Shown here piece after piece: positions 5,654 through 64,000 of a stretch of DNA of 64,000 nt (the stretch's first letter is position 1; the number at the start of each line of letters is the position of its first letter). The notes below the pieces were generated by a model. That model saw nothing but the letters and a program-made list of their open reading frames with translations. It was not told where the DNA came from and did no database searches. Position numbers and translations under genes: made by a program. The stretch is from positions 1-64,000 of the IMG/VR virus record IMGVR_UViG_3300028920_000001; one strand, 5' to 3'.

Positions 5654-7537
5654 ATGCATATTGATGAATTAAAGCAATATTTAAATTTAGAAAAGACTAA
5701 ACAAGAATTTGGTGAACCTAAAAATAATAAATCAATAGTATACGTGATTTGTGAGGATTGCCAATTAGACAGACAAATTACAATCCAGTCACTTAAGAAT
5801 AAACTTAGGTTAGATCGGGGGACTCGTTGTAATGCTTGTGGTACAAGATTTTCTTGGACAAATCCTGAAAGAAAAATTAGACAACAGCGAGTTTGGAAAG
5901 ATCCGGAGTATAGAAAGAAACAATCTAAAATTAGGAAGAAACAATGGGAAAATCCTGAGTATCAGCGCAAACAAGCTACTAAGACTGAGGCACGCAAAAA
6001 TGACTCTTCATATCAAGAAAGGATGTCTCGTCAGTCTAAAAAGCAATGGGAAAGGCCTGAATATCGAGAAAATCAGATAGAAATCCAAAAACAATTATGG
6101 AAAACTGAAGAGTATCGAAAAAATCAAAAAGCATTTAAGACTGAGGAATTTAAAAGAGGTCAATCTGTAAAACAGCAACAAGTATGGCAAGATCCTGAAT
6201 ATCGAGAAAATCAATCTGTAAAACAGCAACAAGTATGGAAAAGACCTGGATATAGGAAGCATCAATCAGCAATTCAAAGTCGAATTTGGAATAATCTAGG
6301 ATATCAGGAGCGGCAGTCAAAATTACAAAAACAGGTATGGCAGAATTTTGAATATCGGAAGCATTTTGAAGAAATTTGGGGAAGTGAAGAATATCGAGAA
6401 AAATTATCTAAATCTTTAACAGAAAAATGGAAAAATCCGGAATTTAGAAAAAGAGCTTCTGAAGCTGCAAAAGAAAGGTGGAAAGATCCGGAATTAAGAG
6501 AAAAACTTTCTATTGCAATTAAAAAGATGTGGGAAAGGTCTGAATATCGGGAAAAACAATCACGGGCTCAAAAAAGAAAATGGGAAGATCCTGAGTATCT
6601 AGAAAAAATGGTACAAGCCAGGTCTTCCCAACTCGGAAGAAGATCTTCTATTGAAAAAATTACTGAACAAATTCTTGGTTTAATTGGAGTTAATTATGAA
6701 ATAGAAGTTCCGATCGGTAAATATAGATTCGATTTTTACGTACCCGAACATGATTTATTCATAGAATGTCAGGGAGAATATTGGCATTCTATAGAAGGAA
6801 GACCTGCTCGAGATGCGGCCAAGTTCACTTATTTTGAAAAGGCTCAACCTGATTCTCAGATTTTATATCTTCATGAACGTGAGTTCTTAAATCCTGATTT
6901 AATAAGACGAAAATTGTTACTCTCCATGTTTGGGGACGGATTCAACTTTATTCAAAAAGAATTCAAATTTTCCGATCTGGCTATCCGTAAATTTGAACGG
7001 AAATCTAAAGAACCTCGTTTGTTCTTAAATTCATTTCATTATGCCCAATTCGGCAGGTCAGCTAAAGTAATTTACGGGGCTTATTTGGAGGATGAATTAG
7101 TTGCAGTCTGTAAATTTACTACTCCGGTTAGGAAAGAAGTTGCAACCTCGATGGACTATGCCTATTCAGAAGTCCTGGAATTAGATAGATTCTGTATTCA
7201 TCCGGAATATCAAAAGAAGAATCTTGCTTCTTGGTTTATCTCTCGATGTTCCAAATTAATATTTCAAGAATATCAAATTAAATGTCTGGTGTCATTTGCT
7301 GATTCAACTTATGGACATTTCGGGACGATTTATAAGGCTGCTAATTGGGAAGAGATAGGAAAGATTCGACCTGATTATCATTATGTTAATGATGATGGGT
7401 TCATCCTACATAAGAAAACCTTATATAATCATGCAGTGAAAATGGGTAAGAAAGAGAAAGAATACGCCGAAGAATTTGGATATCGAAAGGTGTTTGGTAA
7501 AGAAAAGATTAAATTTGTGAAAAAGATTCAATTGTAA
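5654..7537 (+). mobile_element. Free-standing homing-endonuclease-like gene: NUMOD3-like repeats + PD-(D/E)xK (Vsr/DUF559-like) nuclease + GNAT/Mom-like domain (Hef-like)
   Basis: More than 15 ~15-aa W..PEYR..QS repeats; RFDFY...IECQGEYWH nuclease motif; C-terminal FL..FHY, ELDRFC, LVSFAD..GH.GTIYKA.NW. Confidence 0.75.
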
Positions 7538-7764
7538 TGAATGTATTTTTCTTCATGATAACGGCTGAAGAATACCTTAAGCATTATTGTAAAGAAAATA
7601 ATATTAATTGGAATAAGCTTACTCGAGCTGAACAATTTATGTTAACTAGAAAAATTCCTTGTACTATTCGTTGTTTTAGAGTGGGTGGACCTGTCGATCT
7701 AGATGAAGATGGGACTTGTCCTGAATGTGGTGCAATTTGGTTAGCTGATGTTATGGAATCATGA
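7537..7764 (+). CDS. Small Zn-ribbon protein ending in the VMES motif
   Basis: CxxxC and CPECG; ends LADVMES*. Confidence 0.65.
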   Translation: MNVFFFMITAEEYLKHYCKENNINWNKLTRAEQFMLTRKIPCTIRCFRVGGPVDLDEDGTCPECGAIWLADVMES

Positions 7765-7976
7765 TTGTTGACATCCACAGGTGTCATCGGATTCCATGTA
7801 AAAATAAAGTAACTTATTATGTTAAAGTCACCTGGCCTTATCGATTTATGGATAATCAACGTATCATTGGAGTATGTAGCCAGCATAGATACACTGGAAT
7901 ATTTGGTGCATCTAAACATGATATTGAAGAAATTGGTAAGGAAGAAGCTTTTGTTTATGAAATCATGGAATCTTAA
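7761..7976 (+). CDS. Small Cys/His protein ending in the IMES motif
   Basis: ATGA overlap; C..C..CxxH; ends FVYEIMES*. Confidence 0.65.
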   Translation: MIVDIHRCHRIPCKNKVTYYVKVTWPYRFMDNQRIIGVCSQHRYTGIFGASKHDIEEIGKEEAFVYEIMES

Positions 7977-7977
7977 A

Positions 7978-8351
7978 TGAGACGATTTCTTTTACGACGT
8001 GATAAGGATGTAACCGGAATTTCCGGTACCGGAGTGATAGCCGAAGGTGTTATATTTGATGAAAAAGGAAAACCTGGGGAAGGAAAAGTTGTGCTTCATT
8101 GGCGCACATCAACATCTTCAATAGTTATTTATGAAAGTTTGGATGGAATAAAGAAAGTTCATTGTCATAACGAAAATACTAAAATTGTTTGGATAGATTG
8201 TTGTAAAACTTGTATTCATCTACAATGGTATGACGATAAAGGTGGTCAATGTTGGGGAACTTCATGTCCTGTGTATTATGAAGACTCATGTCCTGTGTAT
8301 CAATCTTCAATTCATCCTGAAATAATTGTGAAAACAGTGATGGAATCATAA
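7978..8351 (+). CDS. Phage hypothetical protein ending in the VMES motif
   Basis: F.L.R..DVTGISGTG.IAEGV.F..G...L.W domain common in phages, followed by a Cys-rich segment; ends IVKTVMES*. Confidence 0.7.
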
Positions 8352-8469: not shown

Positions 8470-8814
8470 TTGATATCTATGTCGCACTATTTTAATTCAT
8501 TTGAGGAAATGTGGGATGCCATAATTGATTTTATTTCCCATAATCCAGATGCTGTAATTTTATGTAATGATGATCCGTCTTCAAGAAAAATTGGATATTG
8601 TGCATACGCTTACAATAAAATTAATACATATTGGACGATGGATGTTAAACCATATAATGCTTATATCTGTAAACATTTTAAATCGGATCAAGATGTCAAT
8701 CCGACTGTATTTAATATTCGTTTGATATCAGCGGCAGCACTAAATCAAGGGATAAAACTTGAAAATTTTGATCCTGAGAATTGGCACCTGTTGTCTGATA
8801 TTCATTTAACTTGA
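8470..8814 (+). CDS. Hypothetical protein
   Basis: 114-aa ORF; ends LLSDIHLT*, a degenerate version of the tail motif. Confidence 0.55.
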   Translation: MISMSHYFNSFEEMWDAIIDFISHNPDAVILCNDDPSSRKIGYCAYAYNKINTYWTMDVKPYNAYICKHFKSDQDVNPTVFNIRLISAAALNQGIKLENFDPENWHLLSDIHLT

Positions 8815-9246
8815 CATAATTTCATTAACTTGACATAATTTGCATTTAGGATGATGCCCTACAAATAAGTCGGCTACAATTTCTTTGCATTCTGGACATG
8901 GATATGAAGTGATTACAAAACCTCCACCACTGACTATGACTTCCAATTCATTCTTATTTTTAATTACCACTACTTTAGATACATCCATTTCATAGTTGAT
9001 TGATAAATCAAGAGTTCTAATTATACGATCATGGATTGTTGGAAATTCCCAGCTTTTGGGTACTATAATATCATTGTTAGGTATGGTGGAAGCTAAATTT
9101 TCTTGAAATTCAACTTGGATTTCCCCGTGTTCATACCAAATTTGCCCTTTTTGGTCTAATCTGTAACCAAATTCATCTAGCATCTTGTAAATTCTATTTA
9201 TTTCTTGATGTGATTGGGTCCAGAGATACTGCATTAGTTTATTCAT
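8806..9246 (-). CDS. Hypothetical protein with a C-terminal Zn site and IMSS tail
   Basis: Start reassigned to MNKLMQ at 9246, which removes the overlap with 9260+; CPEC..H..C..C; ends QVNEIMSS*. Confidence 0.6.
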   Translation of the reverse strand: MNKLMQYLWTQSHQEINRIYKMLDEFGYRLDQKGQIWYEHGEIQVEFQENLASTIPNNDIIVPKSWEFPTIHDRIIRTLDLSINYEMDVSKVVVIKNKNELEVIVSGGGFVITSYPCPECKEIVADLFVGHHPKCKLCQVNEIMSS

Positions 9247-9259
9247 ATTACATTTTAAT

Positions 9260-9583
9260 GTGATTTGTATCAGATGTGGGACCCATCTTTGGATATCTGA
9301 AAATCCGGTCAAATGTCCGTATTGCAAAACCTTAAATTATCCTGCTCCAAAGCCTGAATTCAAATCTCAGACTAGACCTGAATATTACCAAGCTAAACGC
9401 GAAAAATATAGCCCACAGAATCAAATTAGACGATCTCTTCCTCAACCCCCAACGGTTGGGCTCGGAGACGCTGTGGAGATGGTTACCCGAGCTATAGGGA
9501 TTAAACCTTGCGGGGGATGCAAAAAACGCAAGGAGACGTTTAACAGGGCCGTCCCTAATATACGTCGTCCTTGGAGACGTTAG
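9260..9583 (+). CDS. Zn-binding phage protein
   Basis: N-terminal CxxC..CPYC and C-terminal GLGDAV..TRAIGIKPCGGC..R motif. Confidence 0.6.
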   Translation: MICIRCGTHLWISENPVKCPYCKTLNYPAPKPEFKSQTRPEYYQAKREKYSPQNQIRRSLPQPPTVGLGDAVEMVTRAIGIKPCGGCKKRKETFNRAVPNIRRPWRR

Positions 9584-34952: not shown

Positions 34953-35234
34953 ATGCGTTTTGCACATATGAAAACTAAAGATGGTACTCTGGTAGTCGTA
35001 TCCGTATCTAAAGACAAACTTTATATTACTATTTCACCTGAATTAGGAATGCATACTGGGATCACCTTAGATCCAAATGCAATTAAATGGAATACAATGT
35101 GGTTTATTAAAATTATCCGTGGTTTTATTGAAGTTGGAAATATTAAATGTGATATTTTCGATGTAGCTAAAACAGTTTTGACTTTAGCGAAGAAACAGCA
35201 TTACGATGTGTTGTTACCAGTGATGTGTAGTTAA
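34953..35234 (+). CDS. Hypothetical protein with VMCS tail
   Basis: 93-aa ORF; ends VLLPVMCS*. Confidence 0.55.
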   Translation: MRFAHMKTKDGTLVVVSVSKDKLYITISPELGMHTGITLDPNAIKWNTMWFIKIIRGFIEVGNIKCDIFDVAKTVLTLAKKQHYDVLLPVMCS

Positions 35235-35641
35235 GTCTCCATAACGTCTGAAACTAAGGCAGTTTTAAGAGTGTCGATTATTTTAAGTGAATTTTTAGAT
35301 ATGGTTTCCATTAGTGCTTCCTGTATATCATAATCGTTTTTTATTATTTCAGACAATTGCCAATGAATATTATAATCTTTTTCAAATAAAATAAGGAATA
35401 GACTAAGGAATTTTTCCATATTAACAGGTTTTAATTCATAGCCTTTTCCTTTACACTCTCTGCATTTCACATCATCTAATGAGACTGTCTGATCTAATGT
35501 TCTATAACTTTCGTTGTGTCCTTTTCCATAACAAAAATTGCAGGGGATTGTTATCATCAGTCCAATTTTATCGAAATCTTCGCCAGAACCATAACCTAAT
35601 AGAATATCTTTAATTTCTCTGCGAAGATTTTCATCCATCAT
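35231..35641 (-). CDS. Protein with a DnaJ-type CxxCxGxG zinc finger and VMET tail
   Basis: CNFCYGKG and CRECKGKG; ends LVSDVMET*. Confidence 0.65.
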   Translation of the reverse strand: MMDENLRREIKDILLGYGSGEDFDKIGLMITIPCNFCYGKGHNESYRTLDQTVSLDDVKCRECKGKGYELKPVNMEKFLSLFLILFEKDYNIHWQLSEIIKNDYDIQEALMETISKNSLKIIDTLKTALVSDVMET

Positions 35642-54717: not shown

Positions 54718-55443
54718 TTATTTTTGCATAATACTTTCGACAATCTCGGTATTTTCTAGCCATTGCGCAATATCAGGATGAATTTGATCTTTGTTAGGTA
54801 ACTTAATATTGCCCTTAGGAATTTTGCTAAATTGGAAAAATCGATTATTTTCCCTAAATATCATGGCAGTTTTCTTAGTAATTTTTGCACCTAATAAGGA
54901 TTGAACTTTTCGCCTTCGTTTTAGGAATACTTGTTTTTCATTGTCGGTAAGATCATCAGGTTGAATAAATCCATTCCTGAGTTCCATGAATCTAGCAGTA
55001 AATTTAGCCACACAGTAGGCGTCTGCTTCATCAGATTGCATGGGATCAGGATTCATTTGATCTAATTGCACAAACCGTTGAATATCTTGTTTATCAGCGG
55101 ATCCTTTACCAGTCAAGAATTTCACTGTGGCTGGATCAAACAAGACACAATCTTTGCGTTTTTCGAAAATAGCCTCGAGAGAAAACATCATTAGGCCAAA
55201 ATGGCGCTCAGAATATTCCCCACCACCATAGGCTGGACTTTCCAGTCCAACCAAATCTACTCTGTGCCGTCGAAGTAAATCAGCAACTAATGAACGAAAA
55301 TGAATATAACGAGCTACTGGGACTACCGATTTTAATGTTCCCTCATGTCCAGAAGCAATTAGTTTTCTCTTGCCTTTTAATGTAGAATCATAAATAGCCC
55401 ATCCATAGGATAACAAACTCGGATCTAAACCCAAAGCCTTCAT
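54718..55443 (-). CDS. ruvC: Holliday junction resolvase (RuvC family)
   Basis: LGLDPS...GWA, VGLE, P.TVK..TGKG.ADK and DEADA motifs; ends IVESIMQK*. Confidence 0.85.
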   Translation of the reverse strand: MKALGLDPSLLSYGWAIYDSTLKGKRKLIASGHEGTLKSVVPVARYIHFRSLVADLLRRHRVDLVGLESPAYGGGEYSERHFGLMMFSLEAIFEKRKDCVLFDPATVKFLTGKGSADKQDIQRFVQLDQMNPDPMQSDEADAYCVAKFTARFMELRNGFIQPDDLTDNEKQVFLKRRRKVQSLLGAKITKKTAMIFRENNRFFQFSKIPKGNIKLPNKDQIHPDIAQWLENTEIVESIMQK

Positions 55444-57231
55444 ATGATACTCCATTTAGAACCTGATGATGTATATAAATCATTCATTTATACCGGTGCT
55501 CCGATTAAAATAGGTGAATTTAGCGCTAAGAAATTACCATTTAAGTGTAAATGTGGGTCAATAAAATTAATAAGAATGAATACCATTACTACTGGGAAAA
55601 GTACAACTTGTGGGGAATGTAGTAAAATTAACTTAAATTACGGTACTAAATTCAACGATCTTATTTACATCGGGCCTTCAATTCGAATCCATCCTCAAAG
55701 TGAAAAAAAATTATTATTTAAATGTAAATGTGGTAAATCTAAGTATATTAGGTTCTTTACAGTAGAGAAAGGTAAAGCCAAGAAATGCGGGGACTGCAAT
55801 TTAACTGTTATTAAAAAGGGCGACAAAATAGGTAATTTTTGGTATGCTGGAAATGAAATTACTGAATATCTAGGAACAATTAAAAAATATCCATTTAAAT
55901 GCAAATGTGGGAAGATAGTGTTTCTTAGTCTAAGAAACACTAAGAAAAATCAAACATGTGGTAAGTGTAATGAAATATTATTGAAACACATGGAAAAATA
56001 TCAAACTTTTGTTTATTTAGGTAAAGATATTCATATCGGACCTTGGTCTAAAACAAAATTGCCATTTAAATGTAGATGTGGGGCATTAAAGTATATTTCC
56101 ATCTCATCTATTACATGTGGAGATACTGTATCATGTACTAATTGCTATCAAATAATTAGTACATGGTATAAAAATAATGTACCAACACTTAAAAAATTAA
56201 AATGTCCAATCTCCCCTAGTCAATTTCCGATAGGTGGCCCAATTCCATTAGAAACAATTAAATTTCGTTCTAAGAGTTATACCTTTCTTTGTCCTATTTG
56301 TGATAGTCAATATAATCCAACTTTAAATGAAATTGTAAGAGGAAAGCGATTAACATGTGGCTGCATATGCAATAAAATTTCAGTTCCTAATAGAGAAATA
56401 AAAAACTTTATAGATTCATTAAATTTGAATTCTGAATTGGAATTCAAATTAGACGGCAGATATTTTGACATTAAATCAGGTAACTTGTTGATTGAATTGA
56501 ATGGAATCCGTTGGCATTCCAAAATAAATTCAAGACAACGTGATACTGAAAAATATTCAATAGCTATGGACAATGACTACCAATTATTGTCCATATTTGA
56601 AGATGAATGGAAAAACAAAAAACAGATATTTAAAAACATTATACAACATAATCTTGTACGCAGTGAGTCCATACTCTTACGACCTCAAAAGTGTGAAATT
56701 TTAAAAGTTCAAAATAAAGAAATCAACGACTTTTACGAAAGAACTCATTATATTGGTAAATGTAAAGCTAAAGTTCACTATGCTGTTATTCATGATTCTA
56801 AAATTATAGCTGCCATGTCTTTTGGTAAGCCAACTCGGCCTACCAAAAGATACGATTGGGAAATAATACGAATAGCAACAGATCCAAATTACCATGTTCA
56901 TGGAATCTGGTCTAAACTCTTGAAATTGTTTATTAAAGAATATAAACCAAAGTCCATTGTGTCTTTTTCAGATAATCGTTTGTTTACTGGAAAAGTGTAT
57001 GAAAAATTGGGTTTCACTTATGATGGAGATGTGAAACCTGATTACTACTGGACGTTAGGAAATAAGAGATTCCATAAATCTAATCTCAGGAAAACTAAAG
57101 AAGAAAAATTAACTGGTTTAACTGAAACTCAGTTAAGAGAAGCCCAGGGATATAAGAAAATTTGGGATTTAGGGAAAAAGAGATGGGTCTATCAATTGAT
57201 AGACCCATCTAATTCCAAAGCCCGCACTTAG
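55444..57231 (+). mobile_element. Hef-like homing endonuclease: Zn-ribbon repeats + PD-(D/E)xK nuclease + GNAT/Mom-like domain
   Basis: Four F.CKCG...CG.C repeats; FDI...IELNGIRWHS...IFEDEW; FYERTHY.G, EIIR.A, SKL, IVSFSDNR..G.VY..LGF, PDY.W, IWDLG. Confidence 0.8.
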
Positions 57232-58115
57232 AGTAAATCGTCGTAGCCCTGCTGAAGTTTCGGTGCTTCAGCAGAAGCTTCGCCTGAACCTAACTGATTA
57301 GAACTGCCGCCACCACTGATGCGTTGTTGGAGTTGCTCTGCTGTGAGCTCGAACCCAAGCTCTTTTTCGACATGCTTCCAAGCTCGCAATCCTTCTTCCA
57401 AAATCCACTGGCGGATTTCCGGCTTGATGCCTTCTTTGCGTGCCCAAGCCGCAGTCATTCCATTTTCGAAATTCTGCTTTTGATATTTTGAATCACCATC
57501 CAAGGTGACCTTGATATCAATTACCTTGAAATCGTTTTTGCGTGCACTAGCATAAGTGCTCTCGAATTTCTTATATTTCTTGGCACTCATCCGATAGAGT
57601 TCGATGGTAGTATATTTCTTTTGATTCAGCAGTTCCAGATCTGCTTCACCATCCTCATCGATCGGGTATTTCAGAATGACACAGCCGACATGTTGCTGTG
57701 CATCATCTAATTTCTTAGTGCTGCAGCAAACGGCTCGATGAGTAATGGTCTTCCCATCTCGCTTGCTCAGGCAGCGAATGGTTCCAAATCCATCACCGAA
57801 GTGGGTGTAAGCTGCTGCGAATTTAGGGCTTTCGATGTTAAGCCGATCAACCTCAGTTAGATCCTTAACGTCTTTACCCATTCTTTCGGCTAACTTGACA
57901 TCAACCTTCTTAACAATATCTGCGATTTCTTCATCGGTAAGAGGGCTGCCTTTTTCCTTAGCCTTGTGCTTTAGGACTGCATCAACATGTTTCTTGAAAG
58001 AGATGACGGAAATTCGGCTAAGTTCGCCCGGCCGGCTTTGGGTGAATCGCTCATAACCACTAACCTGAACGACCTTGCCATCATCAAACCCGAACTCCAT
58101 TACGTCGCTAGACAT
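57228..58115 (-). CDS. Probable single-stranded DNA-binding protein
   Basis: GGAGG SD; H..C..CC Zn site; DI.VT...YQK OB-like segment; Gly-rich linker and acidic YDDLL tail; recombination-gene context. Confidence 0.55.
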   Translation of the reverse strand: MSSDVMEFGFDDGKVVQVSGYERFTQSRPGELSRISVISFKKHVDAVLKHKAKEKGSPLTDEEIADIVKKVDVKLAERMGKDVKDLTEVDRLNIESPKFAAAYTHFGDGFGTIRCLSKRDGKTITHRAVCCSTKKLDDAQQHVGCVILKYPIDEDGEADLELLNQKKYTTIELYRMSAKKYKKFESTYASARKNDFKVIDIKVTLDGDSKYQKQNFENGMTAAWARKEGIKPEIRQWILEEGLRAWKHVEKELGFELTAEQLQQRISGGGSSNQLGSGEASAEAPKLQQGYDDLL

Positions 58116-58194: not shown

Positions 58195-58959
58195 TCACTT
58201 TAACAGGTCTTCGTAAGATATGCCTTCAGTAGATTCGGAGGTCTTTGTTTCAGGATTGGGACTATCATTAGGAGATTGGGACTCTTGATTAAAAAAATCT
58301 GCTATAGCATTAGCATGGGAGCCACTTAATGGCTCTGGTAAATCATCCGGTCTTTTATTTGGATCTAATATTTCTTTAGGGTCAATCCTATTTCTATTAA
58401 CTGCTGGAGGCATTCCGTGACTAAGTCGGCCCTGTTCGTCAGCTGAGCCTGAAGAATATCCGCCATCACCTCCAAATTGGCTACTTCGGTCATCTTTTAC
58501 TAATTGACGTTGAAAACGAATATCTCCATTAGTTTTCTGAAGGTCATCATACTTGAGTTTGACTATTTTAGCGGTTTCTTGAATATCTAAGAGTTCAACC
58601 TTGAGTTTAACGATAGTTTCAGCCTCATTTTTTAACATAGAGGCTGCGACCGCTTTTTTAATACCCTCTGATGGTTGCTGACGAACTATAGTATCATCAG
58701 CTAATTTTTCTTGCATTTTGAGATCTAAGTCAAGTTCGGATTGTTTGACTTCAATTCTTAAATCTCGTTCTCGTTTCTTAATTTTTTGAAGATAATACTG
58801 AACTCGATTGAGATAACTTCGACACTGAGCTATAGATTTCTGGAGATAAATAAATCCGTATTGAGGTTGAGTCGGATCTTCTACTAATTCAATTTCATAT
58901 CCAGCAATTTCATTTAATATCTGGTCTAATTGTTCTTTAGAAAACACCTCTTCGGTCAT
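58195..58959 (-). CDS. Coiled-coil protein with an acidic tail (possible recombination mediator)
   Basis: Long heptad region; ends SYEDLLK, similar to the SSB tail. Confidence 0.5.
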   Translation of the reverse strand: MTEEVFSKEQLDQILNEIAGYEIELVEDPTQPQYGFIYLQKSIAQCRSYLNRVQYYLQKIKKRERDLRIEVKQSELDLDLKMQEKLADDTIVRQQPSEGIKKAVAASMLKNEAETIVKLKVELLDIQETAKIVKLKYDDLQKTNGDIRFQRQLVKDDRSSQFGGDGGYSSGSADEQGRLSHGMPPAVNRNRIDPKEILDPNKRPDDLPEPLSGSHANAIADFFNQESQSPNDSPNPETKTSESTEGISYEDLLK

Positions 58960-58965
58960 GCTGAA

Positions 58966-59307
58966 TTATACATCTGATTTAAGCTGCTTTTCTCTGTGTT
59001 CGATGACACTTTTATGATTTGTGCTGCTGGCTTTAATTCGATCATTGGCTTCATCAACTGAAATAGCTCCTCGAGCGATAGCAGTATCAATAGCTGCCTT
59101 AGTTACAATTTCGCTAGCTTTTAAAGTGAGCAAATGAGCTTCTTCAAGAGATGTAGAGGTTGAACTGCCACTTGCATATACAAATTCAACGTTCATAGAA
59201 ACGAAATGATGAGCTTTCAGTCCAGCTTTATGGGTATCAAATCCGTGTGATATGGTAGCAGATCTCACCACCACTTTTACGTCTTCTTCTTCTTTTGTTT
59301 CACTCAT
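58966..59307 (-). CDS. Hypothetical protein
   Basis: TGTAAACT 5 nt upstream of the ATG. Confidence 0.6.
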   Translation of the reverse strand: MSETKEEEDVKVVVRSATISHGFDTHKAGLKAHHFVSMNVEFVYASGSSTSTSLEEAHLLTLKASEIVTKAAIDTAIARGAISVDEANDRIKASSTNHKSVIEHREKQLKSDV

Positions 59308-59414
59308 GATTAAGTTTACATTTTTCGAATTTGTTTTCTTTTGAAATAATTATAACATAATCTTCAGATTTCCCTACTGACCATCCGGCGAGCAGGCGTA
59401 TCGATGGTAGAGCT

Positions 59415-59813
59415 TCAACTGTTCATCACTTTATGGACTGTATAATTCTTTTTAAGATTAGTAATCGTATTATGTTCATGAACGATCCAAACGATACCTA
59501 ACCAGCCCCAACACATTAAACAAAGATAAAAGGGTTTGCCTATATAATTATTTATATAAGATTCCATAATTGATGAATCTAATCTGATATAGATACTAAC
59601 ATAAATTAAGATAGCTACACCGAAATAAATTGAGCTAATAATACTCCAAGTCCAAATATTAGTGAAAAACACGGTTGTAAAAGATACGGTAAATGGAATT
59701 GCCATCCATGCGGTATAACAACTAAATTCAGCTTTGGCTACTTTAATTTCATACTGAGATTTAATTTTCTCAATATCTGTTTGATTTGGTTTAACCAGAC
59801 CTGAACTACTCAT
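59415..59813 (-). CDS. Three-TM membrane protein with VMNS tail
   Basis: Hydrophobic helices; ends TVHKVMNS*; architecture similar to 60022-60561. Confidence 0.65.
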   Translation of the reverse strand: MSSSGLVKPNQTDIEKIKSQYEIKVAKAEFSCYTAWMAIPFTVSFTTVFFTNIWTWSIISSIYFGVAILIYVSIYIRLDSSIMESYINNYIGKPFYLCLMCWGWLGIVWIVHEHNTITNLKKNYTVHKVMNS

Positions 59814-59814
59814 G

Positions 59815-60021
59815 TCAGTCTTCCATAATCATAGTAACAAATGCTTCTTTTAAATAAATTTTATATAATTTGGGTGAATCTGCTTCTCGACACCAAGGGC
59901 AAATTTCATCCAACGGAATAAGATCACCATCCAAAGCACACGGTTTACCACAACGTTGACATCCAATTACTCCACTAGCAATGGAAATTGGTCTGGCATG
60001 TTGAGGATCATAATGTAACAT
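59815..60021 (-). CDS. Small Zn-ribbon protein with IMED tail
   Basis: CQRC...CPWC; ends FVTMIMED*. Confidence 0.65.
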   Translation of the reverse strand: MLHYDPQHARPISIASGVIGCQRCGKPCALDGDLIPLDEICPWCREADSPKLYKIYLKEAFVTMIMED

Positions 60022-60561
60022 TCAAGATTCCATGATTTCAGCTACAAATGACTCTTTTTTCAGTCTAGAAATTCTATGGTGCAATATTATGAGCCAAGGA
60101 AATGATACTAACCAAGCAACACAGGCTAACATGATGAACGTGTATTCTGGGAGTTTTTTAATGATTGCAATTTTAGATCGGAAAGATTGATTTATTCTAG
60201 TAATTCGAAAGATAAATGAAAAACTCCACGCTATTCCTATTACACAAATAATTGGCGTTATCCAAAGACTGGGGTTTGTTTTTACCATAAAGAAATGATT
60301 GATGATTGGAGTTGCCATTGATCCTACGGTAGCTGCGACAGGAGTCATCCACATTCGAGAAAATGATCTATAAATCCGTTGAAATTTTAAATCTTCCAAC
60401 ATCTGTGCTGGAAAAGAACGGTTAAGAATCTGAACCAAATTTTGCATTTGATTCGTAAATTCAGTACATGATACTCCCATACTTTTAAGTGCCTTATTAT
60501 ATTGCTTCGTTAAGAGTTTTTGATTTTTTAGATAGTCTTGAATGATTTTTTCTTGGTTCAT
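60022..60561 (-). CDS. Membrane protein with IMES tail
   Basis: About three TM helices; ends FVAEIMES*. Confidence 0.65.
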   Translation of the reverse strand: MNQEKIIQDYLKNQKLLTKQYNKALKSMGVSCTEFTNQMQNLVQILNRSFPAQMLEDLKFQRIYRSFSRMWMTPVAATVGSMATPIINHFFMVKTNPSLWITPIICVIGIAWSFSFIFRITRINQSFRSKIAIIKKLPEYTFIMLACVAWLVSFPWLIILHHRISRLKKESFVAEIMES

Positions 60562-61007
60562 ACTGAAGAAGTCCAGGTATTAGGAATTGGATGATGTTCA
60601 ATTTGAATGCCTGCTGCTTTTGCTGCTTCGAAAATTCGTTCATCTCGATAAAACTCACCATAAACAACTCGTTTGACTCCCGCATTACTTAACATTTTAA
60701 AGCATAACCAACAGGGAGAAGCCGTAACATATAAAGTTGAATTTCGAAGTCGGGTCCCATTTGCTGCCGCTTGAGCAATAGCATTAGCTTCAGCATGAAT
60801 GGTTCGAACACAATGACCATCTTCCATCATATGACCAACTTCATCACAATGTGGAAGTCCCTTGATGCTGCCATTATATCCTGTACTTAAAATGGATTTG
60901 TTTTCTCCGATAATTACACAACCTACTTGTTTTCGATCACAGGTCCCGCGTTCAGCCACCACAGTGGCAATCTTCATGAAATAGTCGTCCCAGCTAGCTC
61001 TTGACAT
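60558..61007 (-). CDS. dCMP deaminase (ComEB/DCTD family)
   Basis: WDDYFM, R.TC...VG, TGYNG, HAEANA and PC..C motifs. Confidence 0.95.
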   Translation of the reverse strand: MSRASWDDYFMKIATVVAERGTCDRKQVGCVIIGENKSILSTGYNGSIKGLPHCDEVGHMMEDGHCVRTIHAEANAIAQAAANGTRLRNSTLYVTASPCWLCFKMLSNAGVKRVVYGEFYRDERIFEAAKAAGIQIEHHPIPNTWTSSV

Positions 61008-61015
61008 AGATTAGA

Positions 61016-61201
61016 TTACATTTCCATGATGAAATTAACGATATATGTTTGCCAGTATTCAATGGCTTCTGGAATGGAAAAAGCAGGAGGGCCTTCATGA
61101 TAGCATTCTTCATTAAGACATCCGACGAGAAAGAAGTGCCTTCGATGCCAGACATCACATTTTTGCCCACAGATAGGACAAGGTCCTAAATTTGTTTTCA
61201 T
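61016..61201 (-). CDS. Small Lar-like Zn-ribbon protein with IMEM tail
   Basis: L.PCPICG...V.C...C...EAIEYW pattern as in restriction-alleviation Lar-like proteins; ends IVNFIMEM*. Confidence 0.55.
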   Translation of the reverse strand: MKTNLGPCPICGQKCDVWHRRHFFLVGCLNEECYHEGPPAFSIPEAIEYWQTYIVNFIMEM

Positions 61202-61725
61202 GACACCATAACGCTAGTTACTATTCGTTCTTTTCGATTAGCTCTTCTCACTTTTAGATTCCATAATTTTTTGGATTGAGGATGACATGTACATTTTGTG
61301 ACTACAAAGAAATTATCTTCACCAGGGCCGATGGCAATGATTTTACCAATTTCTACTGGCTTATTATGGATATGAATAAATAACTCTTTATGTTTTTTAA
61401 TGATACTAACTAAAATAATTGTCCAAATTGCAGTTAATCCAATTCTTAAATATAGACTGCCTGGCTCAGAAGGAAAAACATAAGGCACCCATTTAGCAAA
61501 ACTCGGTGGTGCCCATCTATAAGTAGCAAGATAAATATAAAGCAAAATCCAAAATCGTGACCACCAAATCTTACGACTCAGAGGTCGTTTTTTCTCCCAT
61601 TCTAATGTTTTATCAAGTGACCAAAATAATGGTTTGAAGATAATACCTAGTACTTTAAACAGAAGTTTCAGGAAACCCATATCTAAAAGACGTGTTAAGA
61701 TAGGGTCTCGTTTGCTAACATTCAT
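61198..61725 (-). CDS. Membrane protein with VMVS tail
   Basis: TM helices; ends IVTSVMVS*. Confidence 0.6.
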   Translation of the reverse strand: MNVSKRDPILTRLLDMGFLKLLFKVLGIIFKPLFWSLDKTLEWEKKRPLSRKIWWSRFWILLYIYLATYRWAPPSFAKWVPYVFPSEPGSLYLRIGLTAIWTIILVSIIKKHKELFIHIHNKPVEIGKIIAIGPGEDNFFVVTKCTCHPQSKKLWNLKVRRANRKERIVTSVMVS

Positions 61726-62765
61726 CGTTCATTTTGGCAAATTAGAAAGTCGCCGCCACAATGATCATAGCAACTTTGCCAAATTTCACTGGGCATTTCA
61801 TGCTTATCTTGACAGATTTTTCGACACTTCCATAATTTATCCTGGCAGGTAGGTTCCCAAGGAACTTGGTCCATATCCCAAGCTAATCCGACTTCCCAAA
61901 TTTCATTTACAGGGCGATATTGGCTAACAAATCGTTCTTTTCTTCCATCAGTATACCAAACTGCCAGAATCCCTTTTTCTCCGTCTTTTCCTCGTTGAAT
62001 GCGTGTTTTGTGGTCTGTTCGCCATTTATTGGTTTTGCGGAATTTCTTTTTATACGGCTCGGTACCATTGCTGATCCAACGAGTTTTCTTAATTGGTTTC
62101 TTGATTTGAACGTTTCGACTATACAAAACCACACGTAACTTACTTAAATCTTCAGTGACTTCATAAGTTTCGGCATGTAAATAAACTGAAGCTGGATATG
62201 GATTCTTAAAAACTAAATCAAGTTCAGGATAACTAACAGTTGCATCAAACCCTCGTTTGATATAAGTCGATGGTCTCGAATGAGAAGTTCGCTGCACAAT
62301 TTCCATTCCTGACATTAATGCTGCAGCATGGATTGTAGAACTTACCTGACAAGTTCCACCACCGTATTCTTCTTTAAATTCACCGAGATAAATTATGATA
62401 GAAGTCATATACCCGAATTCTTCTGTTCGGGGACCTACTGTTTTATTATAAGAAAATGAATCACCAGGATGAATTGGGATCCATTCTAAATTTGCTACAT
62501 TAGTCTTAATATTATGAGCTCGATTTTCATATCGGGAGGTTTTATATTTACCTACATGCTGGTAAATAGTTTCATATTCTCCCACCACATGATACTTATC
62601 ATATGATTCTGGTGATTTTATTTCAGGAAAAGTAATTTCCGGCCATTTCTGAAGAACTAATAGCTGTGGCTGTGGCTGTGGCTGTGGTTCAGTTTTACAA
62701 GCTGGGATTAGATAAGAGATCGTAATTCCGATAAAGACTGAGGTGAGAATTCTGATCAAATTCAT
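61722..62765 (-). CDS. VanW-domain exported protein or lipoprotein
   Basis: NR..NI, PG..FSYN..VGPRT...GY, GGG.CQVSST, R..HS...YI..G.DATV....DL.F.N motifs; N-terminal hydrophobic signal ending PAC. Confidence 0.85.
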   Translation of the reverse strand: MNLIRILTSVFIGITISYLIPACKTEPQPQPQPQLLVLQKWPEITFPEIKSPESYDKYHVVGEYETIYQHVGKYKTSRYENRAHNIKTNVANLEWIPIHPGDSFSYNKTVGPRTEEFGYMTSIIIYLGEFKEEYGGGTCQVSSTIHAAALMSGMEIVQRTSHSRPSTYIKRGFDATVSYPELDLVFKNPYPASVYLHAETYEVTEDLSKLRVVLYSRNVQIKKPIKKTRWISNGTEPYKKKFRKTNKWRTDHKTRIQRGKDGEKGILAVWYTDGRKERFVSQYRPVNEIWEVGLAWDMDQVPWEPTCQDKLWKCRKICQDKHEMPSEIWQSCYDHCGGDFLICQNER

Positions 62766-63169
62766 TAGCTCTCCATCACTTCAGCTATTCCAGCTAAAAG
62801 AACTAAATTGTCGATTTGGCTCTTATACTGAAAAATGTACACATAGGCGCTTCGGCTACCTTGTTGACCCGTCTCAACAGCAACAAACCAAAATCGGCTA
62901 CAAGTAAGATGCTTATCCTTAATGTCTGCAATTACACCTTCAAAGTTACCTTTTTTAAGCATATTTTTAACTGAGACAACACCATTCTTTTCCCAATCTG
63001 TTGAACCGGCAAAGAAATAGTAAATACAATTAAGTTCAAGAGTTTCTGTGGATAGTTTCCAACGATCTGGCTCCCAATACCGACAAAAATTCCAGGGCAC
63101 TTGATTATAAAATCGCTGCTGAGGGACTTTCTTTTTCCGTTTAGGAGCAGGATTCCAGGGCCAGTTCAT
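62765..63169 (-). CDS. Hypothetical protein with VMES tail
   Basis: Ends GIAEVMES*. Confidence 0.6.
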   Translation of the reverse strand: MNWPWNPAPKRKKKVPQQRFYNQVPWNFCRYWEPDRWKLSTETLELNCIYYFFAGSTDWEKNGVVSVKNMLKKGNFEGVIADIKDKHLTCSRFWFVAVETGQQGSRSAYVYIFQYKSQIDNLVLLAGIAEVMES

Positions 63170-63999
63170 TACTGTTCCCCAAATAGATGGGCGTTTCCAG
63201 TCTTAGTAATGATTCGTCCTTTCGGGGTTTTTTCCACCAGACCAAGCCGCATCAGGTTAGGCTCAATGACTTCCTCAATAGTATCTTTGGACTCACCGAG
63301 GAGAGAAACTAAAGTGGTGAATGCCACTGGCTGATTTTTCTCAGCCAGCACCCGTAGGTATCGCTGGGAGTTTACATCAAGTCCGATGCAATCGATTCCA
63401 AGTCGGTCACAAGTGTATTCAACCAGACGATCATCCACGATGTTAGTAACCTGTACCTGCGCAAAGTCTCGAACTCGACGCAGGATTCGGTTAGCCACCC
63501 GGGGAGTACCTCGGGCTCGACGGGCGAGCTCCTTTGCACCTCGGTCAGTACAGACCATTCCCAGCTTTTCGGCAGATTTAGTGACGATTTGGGTCAGTTC
63601 GTCTTCAGTGTAGAGCTGCATTTCGACTAGGACGCCGAATCGGTCCCGCAGTGGACGCTGCAGCATGCCAGCTCGAGTGGTAGCTCCGATGAGAGTGAAC
63701 GGCTCAAGCTTGATAGTCAGAGGCTGATTCCCTGCCACGACCTCCAATTTGAAATCTTCCATGGCCGGGTATAGGACTTCTTCGACCCGGTTGTTCAGGC
63801 TGTGGATTTCATCCAGGAAGAGGATATCTCCCTTCCGGAGGGAGGCCAAGACCGAAGCCAATTCACCCTTAGTCTTAATAGATGGGGCATTGACTACGAC
63901 CAGTTTGGCACCCATTTCGTTGGCGAGAATACCCGCGAGAGTGGTTTTGCCGAGGCCCGGGGGTCCAGCCAGCAGGATGTGGTCAAGTGCTTCCCTGCG
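63169..63999 (-). CDS. ruvB: Holliday junction branch-migration ATPase RuvB, 5'-truncated by the window edge
   Basis: The frame continues to the edge (EALDHILLAGPPGLGKTTLA); LFLDEIH, LYPAMED, FTLIGATTR and RGTPRVANR motifs. Confidence 0.97.
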   Translation of the reverse strand, partial: RREALDHILLAGPPGLGKTTLAGILANEMGAKLVVVNAPSIKTKGELASVLASLRKGDILFLDEIHSLNNRVEEVLYPAMEDFKLEVVAGNQPLTIKLEPFTLIGATTRAGMLQRPLRDRFGVLVEMQLYTEDELTQIVTKSAEKLGMVCTDRGAKELARRARGTPRVANRILRRVRDFAQVQVTNIVDDRLVEYTCDRLGIDCIGLDVNSQRYLRVLAEKNQPVAFTTLVSLLGESKDTIEEVIEPNLMRLGLVEKTPKGRIITKTGNAHLFGEQ

Positions 64000-64000
64000 G

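What the first reader, a model, noticed from the sequence alone, without database searches (positions are those of the whole stretch)
59415..63169. Densest tag cluster: membrane proteins carry the tail while neighbouring enzymes do not
Six of eight consecutive minus-strand genes carry the motif. The two exceptions are the recognisable host-like proteins (dCMP deaminase and VanW). Three carriers are integral membrane proteins, and 59415 and 60022 look paralogous (TM helices, then H..I..LKK...V...M.S). A tag shared by membrane and soluble proteins argues against a capsid-packaging signal and favours a cytoplasmic docking or degradation signal. Several tails are preceded by K-E-x-F (KEEAFV, KEAFV, KKESFV), suggesting a longer helix of about 12 residues.
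Basis: partly seen in the sequence, partly recalled or inferred. Interest (0 to 1): 0.65.

Follow-up and report, generated by a model that had tools for sequence, protein, structure and literature searches.

The report
Shared C-terminal tag on phage proteins
About a quarter of the proteins of this 427-kb uncultured marine-sediment phage, including six of eight neighbouring genes here, end in the same 12-residue peptide (…V-x-x-[I/V]-M-E-S, exactly at the end); the peptide is conserved and added or lost as a unit, its reader is unknown, and it looks like a virus-wide address or turnover label that I could not find described anywhere.

Summary
Six of the eight consecutive minus-strand genes at 59415-63169 end in [V/I]-M-x-x. 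The two exceptions are a dCMP deaminase and a VanW-domain protein.

The window is the first 64 kb of a complete 426,960-bp phage genome with direct terminal repeats, from marine sediment. About 176 of 671 crudely called genes carry the tag. They lie almost entirely in the small-gene region at 55-250 kb.

The tag is the last 12 residues: [C/L]-[D/E/N]-[E/L]-x-[I/L/V]-V-x-x-[V/I]-[M/H]-[E/D/N]-S-COOH. It never sits even one residue before the end.
- It is selected as protein: all six Ser codons are used, and Val at -7 follows genome codon usage.
- It is not an RBS artefact: 69 tagged genes have no coupled downstream gene.
- It is not a paralog family: 160 of 167 carriers are singletons once the tail is removed.
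- It persists in orthologs down to 34% identity: tail 51% identical against body 23%.
- It is gained or lost as a module, as in the RuvC-like orthologs.

It occurs in about ten related huge-phage contigs. It is absent from the GenBank phages LR745208.1, Tunturi_5 and phage G, which share a related major head protein.

Carriers have no Pfam or PHROG families, with two exceptions. In the membrane carriers the tails appear cytoplasmic.

The likeliest function is a free-C-terminus recognition peptide for one common cytoplasmic reader, serving turnover or docking.

The parts
59415..59813 (-). Tagged gene, 132 aa, membrane protein, ends ...YTVHKVMNS. The tag codons are 59418-59453. No gene follows for 108 nt.
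   Evidence: no Pfam or PHROG family
59815..60021 (-). Tagged gene, 68 aa, Cys-rich small protein, ends ...KEAFVTMIMED. The tag codons are 59818-59853.
60022..60561 (-). Tagged gene, 179 aa, membrane protein, ends ...KKESFVAEIMES. The tag codons are 60025-60060. Relatives that are 77-84% identical in other metagenomes all end IMES.
60558..61007 (-). Untagged dCMP/cytidine deaminase, 149 aa.
   Evidence: PF00383, E 2e-28
61016..61201 (-). Tagged gene, 61 aa, Lar-like zinc ribbon (family match over residues 2-51) followed by about 10 residues ending ...VNFIMEM. The tag codons are 61019-61054.
61198..61725 (-). Tagged gene, 175 aa, membrane protein, ends ...RIVTSVMVS. The tag codons are 61201-61236.
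61722..62765 (-). Untagged VanW-domain protein, 347 aa, with an N-terminal signal or lipoprotein-like anchor, so probably exported.
   Evidence: a 36% identical homolog sits at a different place in G003
62765..63169 (-). Tagged gene, 134 aa, soluble, ends ...GIAEVMES. The tag codons are 62768-62803. All five relatives found among 1.84 billion representatives end [V/I]-M-E-[S/A].
63169..64000 (-). Untagged RuvB-like AAA+ gene; it runs on to genome position 64137. It is the conserved core gene on one side of the variable cluster.
58195..58959 (-). Untagged 254-aa core gene ending ...SYEDLLK, on the other side of the variable cluster. In G005 its ortholog lies one short ORF after ruvB.
54718..55455 (-). 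RuvC-like protein, 245 aa, ending ...EIVESIMQK. The tag is present in 2 of 7 orthologs.
7537..8351 (+). Array of three tagged small genes: 7537-7764 VMES, 7761-7976 IMES, 7977-8351 VMES.
8806..9327 (-). Tagged gene, 173 aa, ends ...QVNEIMSS.
34953..35641 (.). Two convergent tagged genes: 34953-35234 (+) VMCS and 35231-35641 (-) VMET.

Best explanation
The tail is a strictly C-terminal recognition peptide of 12 residues that is encoded in the gene. Its consensus is [C/L]-[D/E/N]-[E/L]-x-[I/L/V]-V-x-x-[V/I]-[M/H]-[E/D/N]-S-COOH. A small clade of huge phages attaches it, as a module, to its fast-evolving, phage-specific small proteins. These are probably early or accessory host-takeover genes that sit in hyperplastic regions between core genes.

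Shown:
- Selection acts on the peptide, not on the DNA.
- The register to the free C-terminus is exact.
- The carriers are unrelated to each other.
- The tag is gained and lost on orthologs and paralogs.
- Enzymes, replication proteins and structural proteins are not tagged.

Inferred:
- One common reader in the host cytoplasm binds the hydrophobic positions -8, -7, -4 and -3 together with the acidic -2 residue and the terminal carboxylate.
- This gives all carriers a shared fate. I favour controlled turnover or hand-over to a protease or adaptor (about 0.3) slightly over docking to a scaffold or compartment (about 0.25).
For: Protein-level selection. All six Ser codons occur at -1. Val and Ile codons at -7 and Glu codons at -10 follow genome usage. 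No DNA is conserved after the stop. The same peptide occurs in genomes of 40% and about 50% GC.

Strict C-terminal register. There are 0 shifted copies in the last 14 residues of non-carriers, and only 6 internal [IV]M[EDNKQ]S matches in 130,828 positions.

Not a coupling artefact. 69 carriers with a convergent or distant (>50 nt) neighbour keep the tag, and their stop-codon usage is ordinary.

Not paralogs. 160 of 167 carriers are singletons by BLASTP once the tail is removed.

Stronger constraint on the tail than on the body. Tail identity is 51% against 23% for the body in ortholog pairs where both members carry the tag. M and E of the tag are among only 13 invariant columns in a family that goes down to 34% identity.

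Modularity. The RuvC-like body is conserved up to '...WLE'; the tag follows in 2 of 7 orthologs. Untagged paralogs simply end about 8 residues earlier.

Clade-wide distribution. The DNA pattern count is 94, 67, 38, 18, 16, 10, 10 and 6 in related genomes, against 0-1 for the reversed control. G005 uses a relaxed form, [IV]-M-[E/N]-x.

Cytoplasmic side. K/R counts run 26 after against 10 before the last transmembrane segment, and the exported VanW protein is untagged.

Class bias. Carriers are 158 of 433 genes at 55-250 kb against 18 of 238 elsewhere (p 5e-18). None of the 56 proteins of 400 aa or more is tagged. 20 larger carriers tested against Pfam gave only two family matches.
Against: - No reader was identified.
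- The phage has no ClpP, Lon or HslV.
- The one complex prediction gave no verdict.
- The polar -E-S end is unlike known bacterial C-degrons. That comparison rests on my recall of the ssrA/LAA and Tsp rules.
- The hydrophobic moment of the tail is not above background.
- There are unexplained codon biases. TCA at -1 is 48% against 22% in the genome, and GTG at -4 is 46% against 16%, even in uncoupled genes. This hints at an added nucleotide-level or shared-origin component.
- Gene calling and topology were crude.
- There are no expression or proteome data: no RNA run holds this phage.
Confidence: 0.55

Rival explanations
1. It is a capsid-targeting (encapsidation) peptide. The tag docks proteins to the inside of the HK97-fold procapsid, as the C-terminal tail of the HK97 protease or encapsulin cargo peptides do, so that carriers are packaged and ejected into the next host.
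For: Short C-terminal peptides with a hydrophobic anchor are the known way to load HK97-fold shells (recalled from the HK97 gp4 and encapsulin literature). The phage has an HK97-type major head protein. Carriers are small.
Against: The prohead protease, the scaffold-like protein and the head protein lack the tag. A different, N-terminal motif marks the small proteins next to the head gene. About 180 different cargoes, including integral membrane proteins and a RuvC-like resolvase, are implausible. Tags are rare in the structural half of the genome.
Confidence: 0.1
2. It is a nascent-chain signal acting inside the ribosome at termination. The last 12 residues fill the exit tunnel when the stop codon is in the A site, and they modulate release, reinitiation, read-through or tmRNA tagging.
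For: The register to the stop codon is exact and the extent is about 12 residues. The phage invests in translation: 37 tRNAs, a tmRNA, a tRNA with anticodon UCA and an EF-Tu. Codon bias at the last sense codon is unexplained.
Against: Stop-codon choice is ordinary once coupling is allowed for, and read-through extensions are no different. 44% of carriers have nothing downstream to couple to. Known arrest peptides sit in short leader ORFs and rely on Pro, Trp or Arg (recalled). Stalling on a quarter of all genes would be costly.
Confidence: 0.08
3. It is an export or translocation signal: a C-terminal secretion signal of the type I or type IV kind that sends phage effectors out of the cytoplasm.
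For: Extreme-C-terminal signals that fail when extended exist in type I secretion. Dot/Icm signals combine an acidic block with a hydrophobic residue at -3/-4. Both points are recalled, not tested.
Against: No secretion machinery was noticed among the proteins scanned. Membrane carriers with the tail on the cytoplasmic side, and a DNA resolvase, make poor export substrates. The motif matches none of those consensus sequences.
Confidence: 0.07
4. It is a nucleotide-level element, either a ribosome-binding or coupling site for the next gene or a recombination joint for cassette exchange. On this reading the peptide is a by-product.
For: ATGGA(R)TCATGA is the commonest form. 56 of 150 carriers overlap the next start. 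There is a bias to TCA at -1 and GTG at -4. Carriers sit in hyperplastic regions.
Against: All Ser codon families and all Val/Ile codons are used. The conserved -7, -8, -10 and -12 positions show no codon bias. Nothing is conserved after the stop. Tags are kept without any downstream gene. Coupled untagged genes (the deaminase and VanW) do without it.
Confidence: 0.05
5. It reflects common descent or an intrinsic structural helix. The carriers are one very diverged superfamily whose last helix is the only recognisable remnant.
For: Many carriers are 60-120 aa. 59415 and 60022 share the last helix plus the tail.
Against: 160 of 167 are singletons. Sizes run from 50 to 365 aa, and carriers include transmembrane, zinc-ribbon, RuvC-like and Lar-like bodies. 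The tag is present or absent on clear orthologs. There is no information before -13. The tail is a low-confidence helix in the RuvC-like model.
Confidence: 0.03

Closest known systems
ssrA/tmRNA tag and other bacterial C-terminal degrons (ClpXP, ClpAP, FtsH, Tsp)
   Same: A short peptide at the extreme C-terminus, read together with the free carboxylate, gives unrelated proteins, both soluble and membrane, one fate in the cytoplasm.
   Different: This tag is encoded in about 180 genes rather than added by tmRNA. It ends in polar E-S rather than non-polar LAA. The phage's own tmRNA encodes a different tag, ANDNASLAIAA. No protease was linked to it.
Encapsulin cargo-loading peptides and the HK97 prohead-protease C-terminal targeting tail
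   Same: Both are modular C-terminal peptides of about 10-12 residues with hydrophobic anchor positions, used in an HK97-fold virus or compartment context.
   Different: The head-module proteins here lack the tag. There are far more carriers, they are far more diverse, and they include membrane proteins. The consensus is unrelated.
Eukaryotic C-terminal sorting signals (PTS1 -SKL read by PEX5 TPR, KDEL, Hsp70/90 EEVD read by TPR clamps)
   Same: The logic is the same: a proteome-wide, strictly terminal, short label read by one receptor through the carboxylate.
   Different: The host is prokaryotic and the consensus differs. No TPR-type receptor was looked for successfully.
T4 capsid-targeting sequence and hyperplastic regions of T4-like phages
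   Same: Small, fast-evolving ORFs are packed between core genes, and a phage-specific terminal peptide is shared by unrelated proteins.
   Different: The T4 signal is N-terminal and is cleaved in the head. This phage seems to have its own N-terminal motif for that role. The C-terminal tag is a separate label.
MoxR AAA+ / vWA-metallopeptidase pair of jumbo phages (Iyer et al. 2021, PMC7824862)
   Same: The pair is present here (187265-188407 and 183462-184934, with an HExxH motif and an intact MIDAS site) and in every tag-bearing relative complete enough to judge. A MIDAS site could in principle bind an acidic C-terminus.
   Different: The pair is described for phages that are not known to carry the tag, and it is proposed to act in virion assembly. 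Phage G has distant copies but no tag. The binding test gave no verdict. It is a lead only.

Membership tests
ssrA-type / ClpX C-motif degron | Non-polar last residues (…LAA-like) at the free C-terminus | tested here: not met
   The last two residues are E/D/N then S in 60-92% of tags.
ssrA-type / ClpX C-motif degron | A cognate AAA+ protease recognises and degrades carriers | not testable with these tools
   The phage lacks ClpP, Lon_C and HslV. The host is unknown.
Encapsulin CLP / HK97 protease targeting tail | The peptide is carried by the shell's own cargo (protease, scaffold or cargo genes next to the shell gene) | tested here: not met
   The protease (…SLSTKF), the scaffold-like protein (…GNELA) and the head protein (…LIVTR) lack it. 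Carriers lie mostly 50-250 kb away.
Encapsulin CLP / HK97 protease targeting tail | Carriers are found inside the particle | not testable with these tools
   There is no virion proteome; the phage is uncultured and comes from a marine sediment metagenome.
Shine-Dalgarno / translational-coupling element | The element lies a fixed short distance upstream of a downstream start codon | tested here: not met
   69 of 157 classified carriers have a convergent neighbour or one more than 50 nt away. Coupled untagged genes lack the element.
Paralogous gene family | Detectable similarity outside the shared tail | tested here: not met
   160 of 167 are singletons at E 1e-3 with the last 14 aa removed.
PDZ / tail-specific-protease ligands | Hydrophobic C-terminal residue (position 0) | tested here: not met
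   Position -1 is Ser in 60-92% of tags. Whether any PDZ protein is encoded was not tested.
Ribosome arrest / termination-control peptides | Exact register of conserved residues to the P/A-site codon | tested here: met
   There are zero shifted copies, and information spans -12 to -1.
Ribosome arrest / termination-control peptides | Sits in a short regulatory leader ORF that controls a downstream gene | tested here: not met
   Carriers are full proteins of 50-365 aa, and 44% have no coupled gene.
Short linear C-terminal sorting signal (general kind) | Modular, position-locked, conserved more than its carrier, on unrelated proteins | tested here: met
Short linear C-terminal sorting signal (general kind) | A dedicated receptor | tested here: inconclusive
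   The only candidate tried, the vWA-zincin protein P0004, gave no verdict. The AAA+ next to it is MoxR/CobS-like, not an unfoldase.

The most novel reading that the evidence does not exclude
This clade of huge phages runs its own protein-addressing code. There are at least three distinct terminal labels:
- C-terminal …V-x-x-[I/V]-M-E-S on about 180 proteins;
- C-terminal KK-I-[I/V]-T-K on 7 proteins;
- N-terminal M-x-[N/D]-[L/F]-x-[K/R]-I-A-x-R-I-A on 12 or more proteins, six of them next to the head gene.

Each label would be read by a dedicated, so far unknown, phage or host receptor. The main tag would give a quarter of the viral proteome a common, programmable fate, such as timed destruction of the whole early proteome or delivery to a viral compartment.
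Probability: 0.3. Interest if true: 0.9.

Novelty: new variant of a known kind. Interest (0 to 1): 0.8.

Why it matters
No phage is known, to me or in six full-text searches, to mark a quarter of its proteins with one encoded C-terminal peptide.

If one receptor reads the tag, this is a simple handle on the 'dark matter' of huge phages. It sorts about 180 unannotated proteins into one functional class. It predicts a common regulator that could be fished out with a 12-residue peptide. It could also serve as a portable tag for bacteria.

The tag has practical uses too. It helps find genes, since it recovered small genes that an ORF caller discarded. It also marks this phage clade in metagenomes: a 15-nt degenerate pattern separates members (6-94 hits) from controls (0-1).

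Tried and rejected
- **Complex prediction** of the vWA-zincin protein (P0004) with residues 95-134 of the 62765-63169 protein, plus Mg and Zn. Score 0.00, no verdict. This is evidence neither for nor against binding.
- **AAA+ at 187265-188407 as a Clp-like unfoldase.** There is only a weak ClpA-D2/AAA_2 match. PHROG calls it 'ATPase' or CobS-like, and I saw no pore-loop motif. It is present in all relatives regardless of tag load, so it was dropped as a specific reader.
- **ClpP, proteasome/HslV and Lon_C** are absent from the genome.
- **Host inference from the phage EF-Tu.** It is 57-63% identical to all bacterial phyla, so it is uninformative.
- **Comparison with the tagless LR745208.1 to isolate tag-linked genes.** Only 75 of 671 proteins are shared, at 35% mean identity. 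That is too distant, and 63 candidates remain.
- **Amphipathicity.** The hydrophobic moment of tails (0.29) equals that of internal segments (0.28).
- **Read-through.** In-frame extension lengths after tag stops are not distinctive.
- **Zinc-ribbon enrichment** among carriers in this genome is not significant.
- **Glu at -2 as a by-product of a downstream SD.** Glu is about equally frequent with and without a coupled gene.
- **Promoter and terminator scan** of 56-64 kb gave nothing above the shuffles, apart from one terminator at 57181-57210.
- **VanW-based search for syntenic loci in IMG/VR** found none. blastn of the cluster against GenBank phages found none.
- **PDB sequence searches** of four unannotated neighbours and one ESM-Atlas search gave nothing usable.
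- **Literature.** Six full-text searches found nothing on this tag.
- **Not used.** Read laying was not used, because no RNA run holds the phage. No alternative genetic code was needed.

Full report
**What is at the coordinates.**
- Six end in [V/I]-M-x-x: VMNS, IMED, IMES, IMEM, VMVS and VMES.
- The two exceptions are a dCMP/cytidine deaminase (PF00383, E 2e-28) and a VanW-domain protein (PF04294, E 3e-39).
- The six carriers have no Pfam or PHROG family, apart from a weak Lar-like zinc-ribbon match for the 61-aa protein.
- Three carriers (59415, 60022, 61198) have clear hydrophobic segments.
- [IVL]M occurs at 0.37% of internal positions, so six of eight by chance has P about 7e-14.

**The genome.** The window is the first 64 kb of a single contig of 426,960 bp, 40% GC. 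IMG/VR classes it as complete with direct terminal repeats. It was assembled from a marine sediment metagenome.
- It is a huge tailed phage. It has terminase, portal, an intein-containing prohead protease and an HK97-type major head protein at 290-305 kb.
- In the window it has PolA, DnaB, RecA, SNF2 and Mom-like genes.
- It has 37 tRNAs and a tmRNA at 75-140 kb.
- It has a sigma-70 factor, EF-Tu, RtcB, Ro60, RNA ligase, Dam, ThyX, DNA ligase and an Apyc1-like protein.
- The nearest GenBank relatives by head protein are LR745208.1 (uncultured, 485 kb, 73.5%), Tunturiibacter phage Tunturi_5 (45%) and Bacillus phage G (36%).

**The tag genome-wide.** A crude greedy ORF call gives 671 genes covering 93% of the genome.
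- 167 genes end in [IVL]-M-x-x and 176 end in [IVL]-[MH]-x-x. The top endings are IMES (25) and VMES (15).
- At least 8, and up to 28, further carriers sit among ORFs that the caller discarded.
- Information content is confined to the last 12 residues: -12 (Cys in 26-31% of tags in two relatives), -11 (acidic or polar), -10 (E or L), -8 (aliphatic), -7 (V 56-82%, otherwise I), -4 (I/V), -3 (M; H in 5-37%), -2 (E > D, N, Q) and -1 (S 60-92%). Nothing is conserved before -13.
- The motif is locked to the end. No non-carrier has it 1-10 residues before its C-terminus, and the strict four-residue form occurs only six times in 130,828 internal positions.
- Carriers are small, with a median of 101 aa. 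None of the 56 proteins of 400 aa or more is tagged.
- Carriers are concentrated at 55-250 kb: 158 of 433 genes there against 18 of 238 elsewhere, p 5e-18.

**Protein or DNA?** The evidence favours protein.
- Ser at -1 uses all six codons from both codon families. Val and Ile at -7, Glu at -10 and -2, and Asp at -2 follow genome codon usage. There is no conservation in the 30 nt after the stop.
- Relatives with about 50% GC carry the same peptide.
- The tail does overlap the ribosome-binding region of the next gene in many cases: 56 of 150 carriers overlap the next start. That explains the excess of TGA stops (ATGA overlaps).
- However, 69 carriers with a convergent neighbour or one more than 50 nt away keep the full tag with ordinary stop usage. 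The coupled deaminase and VanW genes manage without it.
- One residue of unexplained nucleotide bias remains. TCA at -1 (48% against 22%) and G or C in the third position of codon -4 persist even in uncoupled genes. I record this as unexplained.

**Not a gene family.** With the last 14 residues removed, 160 of 167 carriers have no BLASTP match (E 1e-3) to any other protein of the genome. The pair 59415/60022 aligns only over the last transmembrane helix plus the tail. Of 20 larger carriers from this genome and its relatives scanned against Pfam, only two matched: a RuvC-like protein and an M16 peptidase whose 'IMVH' ending is doubtful. Their untagged neighbours are recognisable enzymes.

**Conservation and modularity.**
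- The exhaustive search of 1.84 billion representatives found only five relatives of the 134-aa protein (92, 59, 60, 36 and 34% identical). All end in [V/I]-M-E-[S/A] at the very end. M and E are among only 13 invariant columns.
- The membrane protein 60022-60561 has three relatives, 77-84% identical, from other samples. All end …V-x-x-IMES.
- Across six families with tagged members in different genomes, the last 12 columns are 51% identical against 23% for the rest.
- The tag is also gained and lost. RuvC-like orthologs (55-61% identical) are colinear up to '…WLE'. G000 and G003 then add the tag, while G002, G004, G005/G006 and G007 end otherwise.
- Two untagged paralogs of a tagged family simply stop about 8 residues earlier.
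- In an AlphaFold model of the RuvC-like protein the core is confident. The last 50 residues are below pLDDT 50, and the tag is drawn as a short separate helix. This is weak support for an exposed appendage.

**Distribution.** PolA relatives (55-60% identical) in IMG/VR are huge-phage contigs.
- A 15-nt degenerate pattern for [I/V]-M-[E/D]-[S/T…]-stop gives the following counts, against 0-1 for the reversed control: 94 hits in G003 (436 kb), 67 in G000, 38 in G002, 18 in G009, 16 in G008, 10 in G010, 10 in G004, 6 in G007, 2 in G005 and 1 in G006.
- G005 nevertheless has tails such as VMEE, IMEN, VMNA and VMNQ. It uses a relaxed last residue.
- An IMG/VR-wide pattern scan found multi-hit contigs only in this clade.
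- LR745208.1 (629 ORFs, 2 matching, no C-terminal information at all), Tunturi_5 and phage G lack the tag.

**The locus as a cassette region.** In G005, ruvB is followed by one 97-aa ORF and then directly by the ortholog (49% identical) of 58195-58959. In G000 the same interval holds nine genes (58966-63169), including all six carriers. G007 and G002 have unrelated genes beside ruvB. The VanW homolog of G003 sits elsewhere, among other tagged ORFs.

**Which side of the membrane?** Only 11 of 167 carriers have a hydrophobic segment, against 62 of 504 non-carriers, so membrane proteins are not typical carriers.
- In those 11, the 12 residues after the last segment hold 26 K+R, against 10 before it.
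- The N-terminal anchors start without a positive n-region and are followed by K/R clusters, which indicates N-out, C-in.
- The one clearly exported neighbour, VanW, is untagged.
- This fits tails in the cytoplasm. It rests on the positive-inside rule applied by hand.

**What reads it?** Not established.
- The phage has no ClpP, HslV or Lon.
- The AAA+ protein in the tag-rich region is MoxR/CobS-like.
- 2.3 kb away lies a 490-aa protein with an HExxH zincin domain and a vWA domain with an intact MIDAS motif.
- The pair is conserved, always 1-4 kb apart, in all sufficiently complete tag-bearing relatives. It is absent from LR745208.1 and Tunturi_5.
- Against it, such pairs are already described in jumbo phages and were proposed to act in virion assembly (PMC7824862). 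Phage G has distant copies without the tag. The single complex prediction gave no verdict.
- I keep it only as a lead.

**Interpretation.** Five properties are those of a short linear signal read through the free C-terminus by one reader:
- an exact terminal register;
- modular gain and loss;
- stronger constraint than the carrier body;
- restriction to phage-specific small proteins;
- apparent cytoplasmic exposure.

Because orthologs can do without the tag, and relatives differ several-fold in tag load, it looks like a tunable property (stability, timing, hand-over) rather than part of each protein's activity. This is why I lean slightly to turnover over docking. Neither is shown.

The capsid-packaging, nascent-chain, secretion, nucleotide-level and common-fold alternatives are each weakened by a specific result given above. 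None is excluded outright.

**Limits.**
- Gene calls are my own greedy ORF picks.
- No topology predictor was available.
- Only parts of the relatives' genomes could be held.
- There are no expression or proteome data.
- Resemblances to known degrons and to secretion or cargo signals are recalled from the literature, not tested.

Noticed in passing
G000 73000-73218, 73215-73400, 73397-73564, 75023-75223, 114694-115041, 231238-231417, 241338-241592 (outside the window): A second C-terminal label. Seven small, otherwise dissimilar proteins end in [P/A]-K-K-I-[I/V]-T-K. The major head protein itself ends …RLIVTR. The 55-aa protein 73397-73564 also resembles residues about 35-60 of the head protein. 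The label was not seen in the sampled parts of relatives.
   Followed up: partly
G000 106369, 107417, 119564, 240183, 286060, 306299, 306619, 307559, 307909, 308217, 317243 (gene starts; outside the window): An N-terminal label. Twelve or more proteins begin M-(x)-[N/D]-[L/F]-x-[K/R]-I-A-x-R-I-A. Six of them lie directly after the major head gene, so this may be a capsid-targeting signal for internal head proteins. None of them carries the C-terminal tag.
   Followed up: partly
window 57228-58115 and 58195-58959 (-): The two core genes just downstream of the cluster end in …GYDDLL and …SYEDLLK. The G005 ortholog of the second ends …SYEDLLS. This may be another conserved acidic C-terminal motif.
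   Followed up: no
whole genome; in the window, upstream of 5654, 38885, 58966 and 60558: TGTAA(A/T) sits at a fixed 13-14 nt before about 40 start codons. AGGA and GGAG are each found upstream of only 63 of 671 genes. This may be a non-SD initiation or promoter element.
   Followed up: partly
G000 80541-80615 (-) and 75832-76185 (-): ARAGORN calls a tRNA with anticodon UCA, which reads UGA (reported as tRNA-SeC), and a phage tmRNA with the tag ANDNASLAIAA. Long ORFs are open under code 11, so there is no sign of genome-wide recoding.
   Followed up: partly
G000 299465-302224 (+): The prohead-protease-like gene (919 aa) carries Hint/intein and LAGLIDADG domains, so it is an intein-interrupted head maturation protease.
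   Followed up: no
G000 183462-184934 (-) and 187265-188407 (-): A zincin (HESYH) + Cys-rich + vWA (MIDAS DTSGS) protein lies near a MoxR/CobS-like AAA+ ATPase. The pair is conserved, with variable tagged genes between the two, in G002-G005, G008 and G009.
   Followed up: partly
window 59415-59813 (-), residues 82-85: The carrier has an internal 'IMES' in a loop. Its -7 position does not fit the tag, so it is probably chance.
   Followed up: yes
G000 238529-238918 and 313419-313625: Two tagged small proteins are similar to internal parts of the major head protein (304457-305350). They look like head-gene fragments reused with a tag.
   Followed up: no
G000 125069-126268, 97892-99673, 127317-128558, 65859-67049: The phage encodes its own divergent EF-Tu (57-63% identical to any bacterium), a Ro60/TROVE-vWA protein, RtcB and a sigma-70 factor with a 150-aa N-terminal extension.
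   Followed up: partly
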